Shown in pieces: positions 32,964 through 43,253 of a stretch of 64,000 nucleotides of DNA; the stretch's first letter is position 1; each line of letters begins with the position of its first letter. Made by a program: the position numbers and the translations under genes. Source of the DNA: Macrostomum hystrix (lineage: Eukaryota; Animalia; Platyhelminthes); assembly GCA_950097015.1 (NCBI GenBank), contig CATNEN010000003.1, forward strand, positions 3,472,001 through 3,536,000, read 5' to 3'. The notes under the pieces were generated by a model. That model did no database searches. It was not told where the DNA came from and saw only the letters and a program-made list of their open reading frames with translations.

Positions 32964-35900
32964 ATGGTAACAATGGCCGATGACGACCAAACAGAGTGCC
33001 CGCTGTGCATGGAGCCGCTAGATTTTGATGATTTAGCATTCTATCCTTGTCCATGCGAGTATCAGGTTAGGCTTGATGTCATTTGATAAAAATTAGTATA
33101 GCTAACAACAGACAAAATATAGAGAAAAAATACTTCTAGAAGTGGTTGACGTCGATTGTTGAACAGTTTTAGCATTGTTTTTTCATGACATTTAACGTCA
33201 ACCCAAAACCTTTAACTCCCTAGATATGTAGGTTCTGTTGGACTAAGATCTTAGACGAAGGCAATGGACTATGCCCTGCGTGTCGAAATGTAAGTTGAAG
33301 CGAAGCAACATGCTGTTCCACTAAATTGAGTTTTTTTCGTTCATAGTTTTAGTGCGTCTAAATCGCTGCTACATTGAAATTCATCTGCCCTACCTACCCA
33401 AACAAATCAAGGCGTACAATTCAGAGAAGCCCGCGTCGTTTAAACCTTTGACGGAAGAGGAGTAAGTCGGTTCTAAAACGCTGACTGTCTTATAAAATGC
33501 AATCCAGTAACTTTAAGCAACATGCAATATTTAGGTTGCTATGAATAAATGTTTGAAAGATCTGAACATGAGGATTTGATATCTGAATGTCAGGATTTAG
33601 TATCTGAATGTCAGGATTTAATATCTGAATGTCAGGATTTAGTATCTGAATGTCAGGATTTAGTATCTAAATGTCAGGATTTAGTATCTAAATTTCAGGA
33701 TTTAGGATCTGAATGTCAGGATTTAGGATCTGAATGTCAGGATTTAGTATCTAAATGTCAGGATTTAGTATCTAAATTTCAGGATTTAGGATCTGAATGT
33801 CAGGATTTAGGATCTGAATGTCAGGATTATATTTCTAAACTTCCGGATTTTGTATGTGAATGTTAGTTTTCTTCAGTTGAAGTTGCATAATTTCTATAAA
33901 TTTCTTTATATCTGAAAAGTTAAATTCGCTAGTTAAAGTTCTCTTAAAAACGGTGAACCGCATCTCAGGATAATGAAGATTCGCAAGACCAAGAAGATGA
34001 AGGAGCAAGCCCGAAAGCAGCAACAGAAGGTCACCGAGGGTAACGTCTATAAGAAGGCTTTAAACGAGGTTCGAGTTGTGCAGCACAATCTGGTGTTTGT
34101 CATTGGCCTGCCAGCGAGGCTAGCCGACGCCGATGTACTTCGCGGTGCGGAATACTTTGGCAAATACGGCCGGGTGTACAAGATCGCGTTGTCCAGGCCA
34201 ACCAATGTTGGCGGCGCTGGCGCCCAGGCATCGTTTGGCGCCTACGTGACCTTCTACAAATCTGAGGATGCCATCAGGGCGCTGTTGGATTTGCGCAACA
34301 CCGAGATCGATCGCAGAACATTGAAGGCTTCGTTAGGCACCACCAAGTATTGCAGCTCCTATTTGAAGGGTCACACCTGCCCTAAGCCGGATTGTATGTA
34401 CCTTCACGAACTGGGCGATCCCAATGCTAGTTTCACCAAAGAGGAAATGAATGCCGGTAAGCACAATGAATTCGAGGACAGACTAGTTCAACAGTTTCTA
34501 AGCAATCAGAAGAAGAGCACAGCTAATCACAGTCAGCAGCAGCAGAGACAGGCTGCGGCGGGGCCTTCGTCAGCTTCCGCCGCAGCCGCCAGTGGCTCTG
34601 TCAGCGCAGCTGTTGGCGCTTCCGGTGGAACTTCTATCAAAGCTAGCAAAAAGGCGACGAAAAAAGCTGCTGCCGCTGCAGCTGCGGCCGCCGCTGCCAC
34701 GGCATCGGGTTCCGGTGCCAATGGCGGCGACAAGTCTAAGCAGCAGCAGCAGCAGCCTATAGCGGCTAGGCCAGCATCCAGCATTCAGGGTTCAGTTCAG
34801 GACAGCTCTCAGGTTCTACAGAGGCAACAGCAGCAGCAGCTGCAATCAGACAGTGGAGGCACTTCGGCAGTTCGTCAGACCAGAAATCATCATCAGCAGC
34901 AGCAGCAACAACAGCAGAGAAGCAGCAGAGGTGAATCGCCAGTTATATCCTCAGCAGCGCCAGTAGCAGACAGTGTATTAACTTCAGTTCCATCATCATT
35001 GTCAGTATCGGCGAGTTTACTTTCGTCCTCTTCAGTTTCAACAGCGTCAGCAGCAACAACAGCAGCGGCGGCAACGTCGGCAGCCACTTTGAACTCCGCT
35101 GTCTCGTCGCCTATTGGTCCGTCGCCGATGCCCGTCCCGGCTCCAATGCTGGGCGGCTCAAGCCAGCTTTTTAGCGGCTTCGGCGCCGGACTAGGCGGCT
35201 ATTCCTTCAACGGATCCGCAACCACTTCCATAGTGCCGGCTCCACTGCCGCAGCAGCAGCAGATGGCCGGCACGCCGACAACAAACACCGCGACAGCATA
35301 CTCTTGCGACGATTTAGATTTCGATCCATTTAGCGAATCGCAGAGAGGACTAAGCGAATGTCTGCAAGACGAACAGCAGATGGCCCTGCATGTGCATCAT
35401 CATCAGCAGCAGCAACTGCCGCCCGGTTTTTTTCCGCACCAGCAGCAGCATCTTCATCATCGGGGCGTCATCGGCGGACCAGTTTCATCGTCGGCTGCTG
35501 GCACAATTGAACCACCGCCGGGATTGTTTCGTTCGACGCAGCATCTGCAGCAACAGCAGCAGCAGCATCAACAGCATCAGCAGCAGCAGCAGCAATCGGA
35601 GTCTGAACTGCGGTATCTGGCACAGACTCTGCGCAGCTTATTCCCGAATGCTAATGTAAGTTACGGTGGGCACAGCAACTCAGCCTATCCAGACACTACT
35701 GCAGCCGCTGCTGCTGCTGCGGCCGCTGTTTCAGCTAGCAACTCATCTGCTGCGTCAATGTTCGGCTTCGGCAACATCGGGTCCGGCCGACCGCCCCAGT
35801 CGCTCTCCTCCGCTGTTGGCGGCGGTCACAGATTCGCTCCGGTGATGCCGCCGGGAGCTTCGCCGCCGCCACCGTCGGCCACATCGTCTGCCGGCCTCGG

Positions 35901-36270
35901 CATAATCGGCGCCGGAAATTCCCTGCTGTCGCCGACTATTTCGTCGCCAACGATGGCTTCGAAATTGCCGCCGCCTGGACTTTGGTCAGATCCGGCCATT
36001 GTGTCCAGTCATCATCAGCAACAGCAGCAGCAGAGGCATCAGCAGCCGACATTCAGTGGACTAAGTGGCAGCTTCTTTACCGGCGGCATTAGCAGCAGCA
36101 GCAACGGTGGCCTGGTTAGCGGCAGTCATCTGTTTGGCTCTGGCGGTCAGGAAGCTCTGTGGCCCAGACTGTCGCCATTTGCCATCGATGATCCGCCGAT
36201 GTTTCAACACCATCAGCAGCAGCATCAGCAGTCAGCAGAAAGCGCGGCTGGATTCTACAGGACGGCCTAG
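32964..36270 (+). CDS. CNOT4: CCR4-NOT subunit 4 (NOT4) RING E3 ligase; exons 32964(or 32973)-33065, 33224-33289, 33412-33461, 33969-36270
   Basis: C4C4 RING ECPLCMEPL...FYPCPCEYQ|ICRFCW...CPACR; RRM VRVVQHNLVFVIGL...EYFGKYG; LGTTKYC...C...CMYLHE CCCH finger; phase-consistent GT-AG junctions. Confidence 0.95.
33560..33830. repeat. 21-bp minisatellite (atctgaatgtcaggatttagt) in CNOT4 intron 3
   Basis: About 12 units. Confidence 0.9.
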
Positions 36271-39574: not shown

Positions 39575-40177
39575 TTCTCTCTCTCACCTTCTCTGTCTCT
39601 GCCTCTCTGTCTATCTGGCCATGTGTCTATCTATCTCTCTCTGTCTCTCTCTGTCTCTCTGTCTCTCTCTGTCTCTCCCTGTCTCTCTCTGTCTCTCTCT
39701 GTCTCTCTCTGTCTCTCTCTGTCTCTCTCTGTCTCTCTCTGTCTCTCTCTGTCTATCTGCAGACTCTTAAGCGCTAGGCTAGACTCTACTGACGAGCTCC
39801 AATAAGAGCGAAACGCGTCTGGAGTTGCCTTGTTTCGAATCCGGATTTCATTTTTTTTCGATACATATCGGAATCGATTCCATTATTATACTCGTATTTT
39901 TTAATTTCAATGGGCAGTGTCCTCTCTCCTCTCTTCCCCTCTCTCTCCCTCTCTCCCTGTCTCTCTCTCTGTCTCTCTGTCTCTCCCTGTCTCTCTCTCT
40001 GTCTCTCTCTGTCTCTCTCTGTCTCTCTCTCTTTCTGCCCTGTTGAAGAATTTTTAATTCAAAATATCAGCAAAATTAAAATTAAAGTCAGCTTTAACTC
40101 TTTACCGCGTCAGTGCCTGGGATTGGAGGTGCTCTCCTCTCTCTCCCCCTCTCTCCGTCTCTCTCTGTCTGTCTCTG

Positions 40178-40210
<33 letters not shown>

Positions 40211-40257
40211 GTCCCTCTGTCTCTGTCTCTCTCTCCGTCTCTCACTGTCTGTCTCTG

Positions 40258-40290
<33 letters not shown>

Positions 40291-40517
40291 GTCCCTCTGT
40301 CTCTGTCTCTCTCTCCGTCTCTCACTGTCTGTCTCTGTCTCTCTCTGTCTCTCTGTCTCTGTCTATCTCTCTGTCTCTGTCTATCTCTCTGTCTCTCCCT
40401 CTCTCTCTCTGTCTATCTCTCTGTCTCTTTCTGTCTCTCTCTCTCTGTCTATCTCTGTCTGTCTCTGTCTCTGTCTCTCTCTGTCCCTCTGTCTCTGTCT
40501 CTCTCTGTCTGTCTCTG

Positions 40518-40550
<33 letters not shown>

Positions 40551-40885
40551 GTCCCTCTGTCTCTGTCTCTCTCTCCGTCTCTCACTGTCTGTCTGTCTCT
40601 CTCTGTCTCTCTGTCGCTGTCTATCTCTCTGTCTCTGTCTATCTCTCTGTCTCTCCCTCTCTCTCTCTGTCTATCTCTCTGTCTCTTTCTGTCTCTCTCT
40701 CTCTGTCTATCTCTGTCTGTCTCTATCTCTGTCTCTCCCTGTCTCTGTCTGTCTCTATCTCTGTCTTTCTCTGTCTATCTCTCTGTCTATCTCTCTGTCT
40801 ATCTCTCTATCTCTCTGTCTATCTCTCTGTCTATCTCTGTCTGTCTGTCTGTGTCTATCTCTCTGTCTCAGTCTGTCTCTCTTTA
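39575..40885. repeat. Compound (CT)n/(CTGT)n microsatellite region in three blocks
   Basis: Blocks at about 39575-39757, 39920-40035 and 40132-40885. Confidence 0.95.
39776..39830 (+). ncRNA. Type I hammerhead ribozyme (predicted cleavage after GUC, C39819)
   Basis: CUGACGA at 39789-95. Stem II GCUC/GAGC with loop CAAUAA. GAAA at 39810-13. Minimal stem III A-C-gc-G-U, then C17. Stem I acucua/uggagu, a UAG/U internal loop, then aggc/gccu. Confidence 0.9.
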
Positions 40886-41815: not shown

Positions 41816-43253
41816 ATGGCCGTCTCCAAGATTGACCAGCCCTTTAACGCACTTCAGGAGGCAGAGAGACTGCACGCCGCCATGAAGGGCATCGGCACCA
41901 ACGAGCAGCTCATTATCGACGTCCTGGGTCATCGGCCGTCGCATCAGCGAGCGGAGATCGCCAAAGCGTTCAAGACCTCCTACGGCAAGGAGTTGGATAG
42001 CGCTCTGAAATCTGAGCTGAGCGGCGACTTTCTTGAAGTCTGCGAAGGACTTTGCTACTGCCTGAGCGACTACGACGCCAAGTGCTTGCACCAGGCTGTC
42101 AAGGTATTCTCTAAACTCAAAATTGCAATTTGTCCTACTATGCTAGTCACGTGGATTCGAATTTAAGACATCGGTGAAAGAAATATTAATAGTGCAGCAG
42201 TCACAAGCTAATTTTATCTCGCCTCTCAAGATTGATAAATTTTTATCATTAATATTAAATTACCATTTAACACATGCGCAGTTTCTTTATTATCGCGCAA
42301 AAAGGAAGTTATAATTTAAAAAATGGCAACAAACAACTTCGTCAATAAGAACGAAATAACAAACAAATGCTGCTATCGAATTAAACATTAAAAAAACTAA
42401 TTTGTTAAAAATTTCATCACTTTTATTAATCTGCTTCTAAGAAATCAGTTCATTTAAACAACAAACTCTTGATTTTTCACTCAGGGCGCCGGCACAGACG
42501 AGGAGGCTTTGATCGACATTCTATCGACGCGTAACAACACGCAGATTCAGGCCATCAAGGCCTCGTACTCCAAGCTGATCCATCGCGACTTGGAGGCCGA
42601 CATTAAGTCCGATGTCAGCGGCAACTTTGGCCGCGTCCTGGTTGGAATTCTGACAGCCAACAGGGACGAAAATCCCAATGTTGATCCCAATGTGGTCGCA
42701 CAGGATGTTGAAGCACTGTACCAGGTTGGTTTTACCTCCTCTGCTCCCATTATTTCCTCTCCTACCCAAGTATATTTTCCAACTCGTACACAGTTTTTAC
42801 AGTTTTGAAACATCCCAACATTTACTTTTTTTAAAGGCCGGCGAGAAGAAAGCTGGCACCGAAGAGTCGACTTTCAATCGGGTTCTGTGCAGCCGCTCCT
42901 ATCCGCACATCGCCGCTGTAGCCAGCGAGTACGCCAAGCGGCACAAGAAGAACCTGATGGACGTTATCGACAGCGAGACCAGCGGAAGCTACCGCAGCCT
43001 GCTCCGCAGCGTCGTGTCCTACGCCATGGATCCGGCAGCTCACGTGGCCGAACTATTCTACAAGAGCATGAAGGGTCTGGGCACCAACGACCGTCGGCTG
43101 CAGCGCACCGTTATCACCCAGTGCGAGTCCGACCTGCCGGCCGTAAAGGCCGCCTTCCAGCGACTGCACAACAAAGGCCTGGGCGAGATGATTCGAGGCG
43201 ACACTTCGGGTGATTATCGCAAAATTCTTCTGGCTCTCATTGGCGAAGCCTAA
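41816..43253 (+). CDS. Annexin (4 repeats, about 314 aa, very short N-terminus); exons 41816-42103, 42485-42724, 42837-43253
   Basis: Endonexin motifs MKGIGTNE, VK|GAGTDE, GEKKAGTEE and MKGLGTND, each with a downstream acidic cap (SELSG, SDVSG, SETSG, GDTSG); phase-0 GT-AG introns. Confidence 0.95.

What the first reader, a model, noticed from the sequence alone, without database searches (positions are those of the whole stretch)
39776..39830. Type I hammerhead ribozyme with an intact core, hidden between CT microsatellites
Seen: aggc-tag-actcta-CTGACGA-GCTC-caataa-GAGC-GAAA-cgcg-TC-tggagt-t-gcct. All conserved core positions are present (CUGANGA, G10.1-C11.1, GAAA, GUC triplet). Stem II is a perfect 4 bp, and stem I has 6 bp, an internal loop and 4 more bp. 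Established: the Schistosoma SM-alpha hammerhead has a very similar hexaloop II (CAAAUA) that docks on a stem I bulge. A palindromic minimal stem III (here ACGCGU) is typical of metazoan retrozyme and Penelope-like-element hammerheads that work as dimers. Inference: this is a monomer or remnant of a possibly undescribed retrozyme or Penelope-like family that could give self-cleaved or circular RNAs. It lies on the + strand 3.5 kb downstream of CNOT4 and 2 kb upstream of the annexin, so it could also cut read-through transcripts.
Basis: partly seen in the sequence, partly recalled or inferred. Interest (0 to 1): 0.92.

Follow-up and report, generated by a model that had tools for sequence, protein, structure and literature searches.

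The report
Truncated copy of hammerhead-bearing repeat
The self-cutting hammerhead RNA motif is real, but it sits in one broken-off, solitary copy of a ~340-bp mobile repeat that this Macrostomum flatworm genome carries about 130 times inside CT-rich microsatellites; it is a new example of a known kind of element, and this copy is probably inert.

Summary
The motif at 39776-39830(+) is exactly as described. It has an intact type I hammerhead core, a 4-bp helix II, a 6+4-bp helix I, and a helix III of one base pair plus a palindromic CGCG loop. It is not a stand-alone gene. It belongs to a 5'-truncated, diverged copy (unit positions 146-292, about 90% identity) of a ~292-nt body plus ~47-nt CT-rich tail. 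The genome holds about 133 3' ends of this repeat, 46 full-length copies and 71 intact ribozyme cores.

All sampled copies are anchored at the 3' end and truncated to varying degrees at the 5' end. They lie in CT-rich microsatellites, and some form partial head-to-tail tandems. The flanking "CT microsatellites" are the split target array plus the element's own tail.

The family looks like a non-LTR retrozyme or an Sm-alpha-like element. Its reverse-transcriptase partner was not found: Penelope-like elements are abundant here but share only the ribozyme core with it. No RNA data were available, so transcription and cleavage are untested. The window copy has no second ribozyme nearby, lacks the A-box-like motif and half of the predicted rod. 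As a monomer this ribozyme type cleaves poorly.

The scan has met this family before on other DNA of this genome. Verdict: new member of a known kind, low interest.

The parts
39622..39758 (.). Upstream half of the (TGTCTCTCTC)n microsatellite that was the insertion target
   Evidence: TRF: period 10, 13.9 copies. The same unit resumes downstream of the element.
39770..39920 (+). 5'-truncated body of the repeat (unit positions 146-292 of a 292-nt body), 89.6% identical to the near-consensus natural copy L015
   Evidence: BLAST of the unit against the sampled loci, genome search, flank comparison.
39776..39830 (+). Type I hammerhead ribozyme motif: helix I of 6 bp + internal loop + 4 bp, core, helix II, minimal helix III
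   Evidence: It differs from the family version only at the free core position N7 (C instead of T).
39789..39813 (+). Catalytic core and helix II: CUGACGA, GCUC-CAAUAA-GAGC, GAAA
39813..39818 (+). Palindromic ACGCGU: helix III of a single A-U pair capped by a CGCG loop. In a dimer it could form a 6-bp intermolecular helix, with a duplex estimate of -7.5 kcal/mol.
   Evidence: The same GAAACGCGTC occurs in 147 hammerhead-like sites of the genome.
39819..39820 (+). Predicted self-cleavage site (after C17 of GUC)
   Evidence: Position derived from the sequence. Cleavage itself is not shown.
39832..39842 (+). Remnant of the B-box-like GGTTCGAATCC motif, here GTTTCGAATCC (G to T at 39833). In the full unit this stretch is one arm of a long inverted repeat.
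39851..39858 (+). T run (T8 here, T6 in the family) directly after the B-box-like motif. In a Pol III transcript it would act as a terminator.
   Evidence: The role as terminator is inferred.
39921..39956 (+). CT-rich tail belonging to the element. It is a diverged version of the conserved ~47-nt family tail.
   Evidence: The tail sequence is found almost only next to copies of this family.
39957..40036 (.). Downstream half of the split target microsatellite

Best explanation
The hammerhead at 39776-39830 is the ribozyme domain of one old, 5'-truncated, solitary copy of a ~340-nt non-coding retroelement of a Macrostomum flatworm genome. The unit is a 292-nt body plus a ~47-nt CT-rich tail.

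Shown:
- The family has about 133 3' ends, 46 full-length copies and 71 intact ribozyme cores.
- Copies are anchored at the 3' end and truncated at any position at the 5' end.
- Copies lie in CT-rich micro- or minisatellites, and a quarter or more of full-length copies directly follow another copy's 3' end and tail.
- The unit RNA is predicted to fold into a very stable rod with the hammerhead at its tip.

Inferred:
- The family spreads by target-primed reverse transcription that starts on its CT-rich tail at CT-rich repeats. It uses a reverse transcriptase supplied in trans, most likely a Penelope-like element.
- Transcripts that span two units are cut by the ribozymes acting as a dimer through the palindromic helix III, as in amphibian and other non-LTR retrozymes. 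They may then be circularised.
- The window copy keeps the ribozyme but has lost the 5' half of the unit (the A-box-like motif and the left arm of the rod). It has no partner ribozyme nearby, so it is most likely an inert relic and not a working gene.
For: - The motif and its coordinates are confirmed.
- Dispersed copies at about 89% identity to the window copy, and 97-100% to each other.
- 71 exact cores, control 0. 133 3' junctions, control 0. 46 5' ends. 12 exact head-to-tail junctions.
- Of 78 sampled copies, all but three reach the 3' end, while 5' ends range from unit position 1 to 265. An upstream copy's 3' end precedes 14 of 34 full-length copies but only 1 of 44 truncated ones.
- Flanks are CT-rich repeats with the same unit on both sides.
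- Unit RNA: MFE -114.6 kcal/mol, against -83.1 +/- 4.5 for shuffles, z = -7.05.
- The genome holds at least 7 other hammerhead families, in Penelope-like 3' UTRs and in telomere-tailed elements. They have the same GAAACGCGUC, but their helices I and II differ in sequence and stay complementary.
- More than 117 Penelope-like ORF fragments with a GIY-YIG domain.
- Literature: non-LTR retrozymes of 170-400 nt with type I hammerheads occur in platyhelminths, and the one-pair helix III with a palindromic tetraloop needs dimers (PMC7229834). Penelope-like elements show microsatellite bias, tails and partial tandems (PMC8557442). Retrozymes appear to be non-autonomous derivatives of Penelope-like elements (bioRxiv 10.64898/2026.07.22.740005).
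Against: - No RNA evidence at all. The only runs found are kept as contigs and none is on record as RNA.
- No reverse-transcriptase partner was identified. About 8 sampled Penelope-like families end in ...CTACC, not in a CT-rich tail, and share only the ribozyme core with the repeat. The tail sequence is essentially private to this family.
- No compensatory changes occur in the ribozyme stems or the rod within this young family: 0 of 102 pairs.
- Nearest-neighbour folding prefers an inactive pairing of GACG with CGUC (-18.2 kcal/mol) over the hammerhead fold (-14.0).
- Most copies are singletons or dimers, not the long tandem arrays typical of described retrozymes.
Confidence: 0.85

Rival explanations
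1. The family is a classical tRNA-derived, Pol III-transcribed SINE, like Schistosoma Sm-alpha. It would be mobilised by a LINE that targets (TC)n-type microsatellites, with the hammerhead as a passenger between the A and B boxes. Penelope-like elements and circular RNAs would play no part.
For: - An A-box-like TAGCCTAATGG lies at unit 131-141 and an exact B-box consensus GGTTCGAATCC at 208-218, with a T6 run at 228-233.
- The 3'-anchored 5' truncation fits LINE-type target-primed reverse transcription equally well.
- No homology to sampled Penelope-like ends.
- Sm-alpha is a tRNA-Gln-derived SINE-like element with a hammerhead (PMC2770079).
- From my memory only, Tx1-group LINEs such as Kibi target (TC)n.
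Against: - No tRNA is recognisable. ARAGORN finds none, with or without introns, and the Rfam tRNA model gives no match even at E 10.
- The B-box stretch is one arm of a long inverted repeat of the rod.
- A Pol III start near the A box would omit unit positions 1-120, which 46 copies carry, and the T run would stop transcription before the tail.
- No LINE with this tail was seen.
- Frequent precise head-to-tail junctions are typical of Penelope-like elements and retrozymes, not of SINEs.
Confidence: 0.2
2. The window copy has been domesticated as a working cis-acting ribozyme. It would process or terminate CNOT4 read-through or annexin 5' transcripts, in the way proposed for the conserved intronic HH9 of amniotes.
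For: - It lies on the same strand as both genes, 3.5 kb from the CNOT4 stop and 2 kb from the annexin start.
- The ribozyme differs from the family version at one free position only, whereas the rest of the copy differs at 15 of 92 positions (Fisher p = 0.005).
Against: - Most of the 15 differences sit in one ~25-nt private segment, so they are not independent events.
- The copy was noticed because its core is intact, which is an ascertainment bias.
- The minimal helix III gives poor monomer cleavage (PMC7229834).
- There is no evidence that the site is transcribed.
- 70 other copies keep an intact core without any such role.
Confidence: 0.04
3. The motif is a chance match in low-complexity DNA.
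For: The Rfam score is below the gathering threshold. The folding z-score of the 66-nt stretch is only -1.27.
Against: The pattern has 71 exact genomic copies against 0 for the control. The window copy is homologous over 151 nt to a defined repeat family.
Confidence: 0.01

Closest known systems
Non-LTR retrozymes of animals (Cervera & de la Pena 2020, PMC7229834), especially the axolotl/newt satellite type (HHR_Amex1)
   Same: A non-coding unit of ~300-350 nt with one type I hammerhead. Helix III is a single base pair capped by a palindromic tetraloop, so the ribozyme is expected to act as a dimer. Head-to-tail copies occur. There is no LTR and no ORF. The unit RNA is predicted to be highly self-complementary. 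Such repeats are reported in platyhelminths.
   Different: Copies here are mostly dispersed singletons or dimers (about 130 copies), not long arrays. The family has a defined CT-rich tail and a strict preference for CT-rich microsatellites. The body GC content is 47.6%, at the upper edge of what is described. Expression and circular RNA are not shown.
Schistosoma Sm-alpha / Sj-alpha SINE-like elements with hammerheads (Ferbeyre 1998; Laha 2000; cited in PMC2770079)
   Same: A flatworm host and a dispersed non-coding repeat (I recall Sm-alpha at ~330 bp; not checked here). Pol III A/B-box-like motifs plus a type I hammerhead.
   Different: Sm-alpha's tRNA part is recognised as tRNA-Gln by tRNAscan-SE (PMC2770079). 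Here no tRNA is recognisable, and the ribozyme lies between the two box-like motifs. Helix III here is minimal and palindromic. The tail is CT-rich. The copy number is about 100-fold lower.
Minimal hammerheads of Penelope-like elements (Cervera & de la Pena 2014; Craig et al. 2021, PMC8557442)
   Same: The same GAAACGCGUC helix III and cleavage site as the Penelope-like element hammerheads of this very genome. Microsatellite insertion bias, a tail and partial tandems.
   Different: The genome's Penelope-like hammerheads have a 3-5-bp helix I without a loop, and an extra U or A between A9 and G10.1. The repeat's hammerhead has the canonical core and a long, looped helix I. No sequence similarity exists outside the core.
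Rfam Hammerhead_HH9 (RF02275), the conserved intronic hammerhead of amniotes
   Same: It is the best-scoring Rfam model. Core and helix II are nearly identical (GAGCUCCAAnAAGAGCGAAAC).
   Different: HH9 has a 3-bp helix III with a 5-nt loop and is a single-copy conserved intronic element. The scores here are 32.2 and 38.7 bits, below the gathering score of 52. This is not a member.

Membership tests
Hammerhead ribozyme, type I | Conserved core: C3-U4-G5-A6-N7-G8-A9, G12-A13-A14, and A15.1-U16.1 followed by H17 | tested here: met
   CUGACGA ... GAAA ... (A)CGCG(U)C at 39789-39819.
Hammerhead ribozyme, type I | Helix II closed by a loop with a G10.1-C11.1 pair; helix I open (5' and 3' ends in helix I) | tested here: met
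   GCUC/GAGC with a CAAUAA loop. Helix I is ACUCUA/UGGAGU plus AGGC/GCCU.
Hammerhead ribozyme, type I | Score at or above the curated threshold of an Rfam hammerhead model | tested here: not met
   HH9 gives 32.2 bits (window copy) and 38.7 bits (near-consensus copy), against a gathering score of 52. The deficit is the missing helix III.
Hammerhead ribozyme, type I | Helices supported by compensatory changes | tested here: inconclusive
   None within this young family. Across the genome's hammerhead families, helix II takes 7 different complementary sequences and helix I also differs in sequence while staying complementary.
Hammerhead ribozyme, type I | Self-cleavage after H17 | not testable with these tools
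   Only contigs of public runs were available, and they cannot show RNA ends.
Non-LTR retrozyme | Non-coding unit of ~170-400 nt carrying a type I hammerhead, without LTR, PBS or PPT | tested here: met
   A 292-nt body plus a ~47-nt tail, with no ORF of note and no terminal long repeats.
Non-LTR retrozyme | Head-to-tail tandem copies, so that two ribozymes flank a unit | tested here: inconclusive
   For the family: 12 exact junctions among 46 full-length copies, and the upstream copy is usually partial. For the window copy: not met, as it is the only hammerhead in 64 kb.
Non-LTR retrozyme | Expressed as linear and circular unit-length RNA | not testable with these tools
   No run on record as RNA, and only contigs were available.
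Non-autonomous derivative of a Penelope-like element | Sequence similarity of its ends to the pLTR or terminal region of a resident Penelope-like element | tested here: not met
   Against about 8 sampled Penelope-like families, only the ~35-nt ribozyme core aligns.
tRNA-derived SINE (Sm-alpha-like) | A recognisable tRNA-related region with A and B boxes | tested here: not met
   The box-like motifs are present in the family. ARAGORN and the Rfam tRNA model find no tRNA. The window copy lacks the A-box-like motif, and its B-box-like motif is mutated.

The most novel reading that the evidence does not exclude
The family could be a so-far undescribed retrozyme design. In this reading a canonical, loop-docking type I hammerhead sits between Pol III A/B-box-like motifs at the tip of a viroid-like rod. 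Units would be transcribed across tandem junctions, cut by dimerising ribozymes and circularised. They would then be copied specifically into CT-rich microsatellites by priming on a dedicated CT-rich tail, using a reverse transcriptase that shares no terminal sequence with the repeat. The window copy would be one fossil of that process.
Probability: 0.2. Interest if true: 0.55.

Novelty: new member of a known kind. Interest (0 to 1): 0.25.

Why it matters
Ribozyme-bearing repeats (retrozymes, Sm-alpha, Penelope-like elements) are the main source of hammerheads in animal genomes and a natural route to small circular RNAs. This family gives a compact, young, low-copy example in Macrostomum, a flatworm genus used as a laboratory model. 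It has clear insertion signatures and an unusually strict microsatellite target. That could help to work out how such elements are primed and which enzyme copies them. The window copy itself adds nothing beyond being one more member, and it probably has no effect on CNOT4 or the annexin gene.

Tried and rejected
- Rfam at gathering thresholds found nothing in the window.
- ARAGORN on four copies, and with introns allowed, found no tRNA. At an 80% threshold it gave only nonsensical calls.
- Search for a partner element gave no identification:
  - GIY-YIG and Penelope-like ORFs are abundant.
  - Their 3' ends differ from the repeat's tail and align only at the ribozyme core.
  - No RT ORF lies next to any sampled copy.
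  - The tail is private to the family.
  - The 5' region hits only family copies.
- Covariation within the family is absent.
- The internal (CT)n of one Penelope-like family first looked like a matching tail. It lies inside that element's 3' UTR, so I rejected it.
- Cofolding of two ribozymes does not give the dimeric hammerhead, because that topology is not nested. Only the 6-bp duplex energy could be computed.
- The RNA evidence gave no verdict on expression. The look-up of sequencing runs returned six runs, all kept as contigs and none on record as RNA. Read laying showed the unit in contigs of the likely source organism, a 157-nt piece at 99% identity in a second labelled organism, and only the ribozyme core in a different context in a third.
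- A metagenome scan for the core found no match. I wrote that pattern so that it cannot match the amniote/human HH9.
- The test of low divergence in the ribozyme against the rest of the copy is weakened by clustered differences and by ascertainment.

Full report
**Observation.**
- Helix I is AGGC / UAG bulge / ACUCUA, pairing with UGGAGU / U / GCCU.
- The core is CUGACGA, helix II is GCUC-CAAUAA-GAGC, followed by GAAA.
- Helix III is a single A-U pair around a palindromic CGCG loop, followed by C17 at 39819.
- Rfam's Hammerhead_HH9 model matches 39773-39839 at 32.2 bits (E 1.4e-6 for the 261 nt searched). That is below its gathering score of 52, because the model's helix III is absent.
- Nothing in the 64-kb window reaches an Rfam gathering score, and the window holds no second hammerhead.
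- The gene context is as stated. The last CNOT4 exon (RRM plus zinc finger; 93% identical to a Macrostomum lignano protein over the first 175 residues, with the next-best hits at 61% or less) ends at 36270. An annexin repeat exon starts at 41816. Both are on the + strand.
- The genome is therefore a Macrostomum flatworm that is not M. lignano itself. It has 220 Mb in 42 contigs.

**It is a copy of a repeat.** Window 39755-39920 finds dozens of dispersed matches at 88-89% identity. The flanks of those matches show a longer unit.
- The body is 292 nt and starts AGGCCAGCACCGG.
- A conserved CT-rich tail of ~47 nt follows the body.
- I used the natural copy L015:1356-1647 as the reference and built no consensus.
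- Whole-genome pattern counts, each with a reversed-pattern control of 0-1, are:

| Feature | Count |
|---|---|
| Intact ribozyme cores with this helix II | 71 |
| Body-tail junctions | 133 |
| 5' ends | 46 |
| Tails | 90 |

- The window copy is the only one of the 71 cores with C at the free core position N7.

**Anatomy of the unit**.
- An A-box-like TAGCCTAATGG lies at 131-141.
- The hammerhead spans 152-206, with cleavage after 195.
- An exact B-box consensus GGTTCGAATCC lies at 208-218, and a T6 run at 228-233.
- The tail starts at 290.
- Despite the box motifs, no tRNA is recognisable. ARAGORN finds none, even with introns allowed, and the Rfam tRNA model gives no match at E up to 10.
- The unit RNA is predicted to form a very stable rod: -114.6 kcal/mol against -83.1 +/- 4.5 for 200 shuffles, z = -7.05.
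- In that rod, positions 69-121 pair with 209-294. A small hairpin and the hammerhead sit at the tip. The B-box-like stretch is one arm of this inverted repeat.
- The support for the rod is thermodynamic only. Ten full-length copies show no compensatory change in 102 predicted pairs.

**Insertion signature.** I mapped 78 distinct copies onto the unit.
- All but three reach the 3' end, while 5' ends fall anywhere from position 1 to 265.
- Copies are 97-100% identical to the reference, apart from a few older ones.
- The flanks are CT-rich micro- or minisatellites, often with the same unit on both sides.
- The 3' end and tail of another copy precede 14 of 34 full-length copies, but only 1 of 44 truncated ones.
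- There are 12 exact head-to-tail junctions genome-wide.
- This pattern indicates target-primed reverse transcription from the tail into CT-rich repeats. Some products exceed one unit, or new copies land at the tail of an older one. These data do not separate those two readings.

**The window copy.**
- It covers unit positions 146-292 at 89.6% identity, so it is among the oldest copies sampled.
- It begins 6 nt before the hammerhead. It therefore lacks the A-box-like motif and the whole left arm of the rod.
- Its B-box-like motif carries a G-to-T change at 39833.
- Its tail (39921-39956) is followed by the same (TGTCTCTCTC)n array that precedes the copy. The "CT microsatellites" are thus a split target plus the element's own tail.
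- The ribozyme differs from the family version at one position, against 15 of 92 elsewhere (p = 0.005). Most of those differences sit in one private ~25-nt segment found nowhere else in the genome, and the copy was picked because its core is intact. I give this test little weight.

**Other hammerheads in the genome.** The pattern CTGANGA...CGAAACGCGTC occurs 147 times, against 2 for the control.
- At least seven other families share the same helix III and cleavage site.
- Their helix II sequences differ but stay complementary: GGCUA/UAGCC, GCAC/GUGC, GUCC/GGAC, GAUC/GAUC, GGGAA/UUCCC, GGCUG/CAGCC.
- Their helix I is only 3-5 bp and also differs between families while staying complementary. They carry an extra U or A after A9.
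- These families lie about 90 nt from the 3' end of Penelope-like elements with GIY-YIG ORFs, or in short elements followed by CCCTAA telomere repeats near contig ends.
- This supports genuine hammerhead folds across the genome.
- The repeat's ribozyme is of a different make: a canonical core, a long looped helix I and a CAAUAA loop close to the HH9 consensus.

**Partner.** I could not identify the reverse transcriptase.
- About eight Penelope-like families end in ...CTACC, not in a CT-rich tail, and align with the repeat only over the ribozyme core.
- No RT ORF lies beside any sampled copy.
- The tail is essentially private to the family.
- I still favour Penelope-like elements, at roughly even odds. 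The grounds are their abundance here, the shared helix III, the microsatellite bias, tails and partial tandems described for them (PMC8557442), and the recent evidence that animal retrozymes derive from them (bioRxiv 10.64898/2026.07.22.740005).

**RNA.** Expression, cleavage and circles remain untested.
- Laying four of them shows the whole unit in one contig of the likely source organism. A 157-nt piece with one difference appears in a second labelled organism. Only the ribozyme core, flanked by a different long helix I, appears in a third.
- Contigs cannot show RNA ends.
- A metagenome scan for the core found nothing.

**Comparison with known systems.** The unit fits the non-LTR retrozymes of animals: 170-400 nt with a type I hammerhead, reported in platyhelminths among other phyla (PMC7229834). 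Its helix III is the architecture described for the axolotl HHR_Amex1, a single pair capped by a palindromic tetraloop. Monomers of that ribozyme cleave poorly (6% in 1 h) and it needs dimers. [quoted passage not shown] It is not a member of HH9. The held library has no paper that links Macrostomum with hammerhead ribozymes.

**Earlier notes of this scan.** Earlier notes on other pieces of this genome describe the same ~330-bp family and the Penelope-like and telomere-tailed hammerheads. I reached the family reading before opening them, and re-derived the parts I use.

**Verdict.** The copy is most likely inert, and the kind of element is known. I class it as a new member of a known kind, with low interest.

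Noticed in passing
L066:4951-6130, L067:4953-6060, L068:5147-6230 (G000 C33, C3, C7): 5'-truncated Penelope-like elements. A GIY-YIG ORF is followed by a 3' UTR with an internal (CT)n stretch. A minimal hammerhead (CUGAAGA-U-GGCUA...UAGCC) lies about 60 nt from the 3' end, which reads ...CTCTACC.
   Followed up: partly
L096, L097, L098, L104 (G000 C7:13.47-13.50 Mb near the contig end; C14:7.7 kb; C9:52 kb): Hammerheads with a GCUC/GAGC helix I, followed within ~10 nt by CCCTAA telomere-type repeats and located near contig ends. They resemble Athena-like telomere-attaching elements. The scan has noted them before.
   Followed up: partly
L090:195-423 (G000 C1:10226429-10226645): Two minimal hammerheads (GUCC/GGAC helix II) on opposite strands about 190 nt apart. 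This is the head-to-head arrangement typical of paired truncated Penelope-like insertions.
   Followed up: no
G000 C38:21523729-21528458 (L016-L020): Five identical copies of the repeat, all truncated at unit position 112, spaced alternately 690 and 1589 bp apart within a CTCACTCTCC-type satellite. This is a DNA-level tandem duplication of a block containing the repeat, not five insertions.
   Followed up: partly
window 40132-40882: A 750-bp CT-rich (CTCTCTCTGT-type) microsatellite array between the repeat copy and the annexin gene. It produces long spurious Leu/Ser-rich ORFs on the + strand.
   Followed up: partly
window 33549-33866 (+): A 105-aa ORF made of repeats of the form SECQDL(V/I/G) lies just upstream of the CNOT4 last exon. 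It is probably a minisatellite in an intron and not coding sequence.
   Followed up: no
Run X1 (organism A), contig record 1, laid on L015:1515-1555: A 232-nt contig of another labelled organism holds the same ribozyme core (5 differences in 41 nt). Unrelated flanks form a long helix I (~15 bp). This may be a different retrozyme family in a relative.
   Followed up: no
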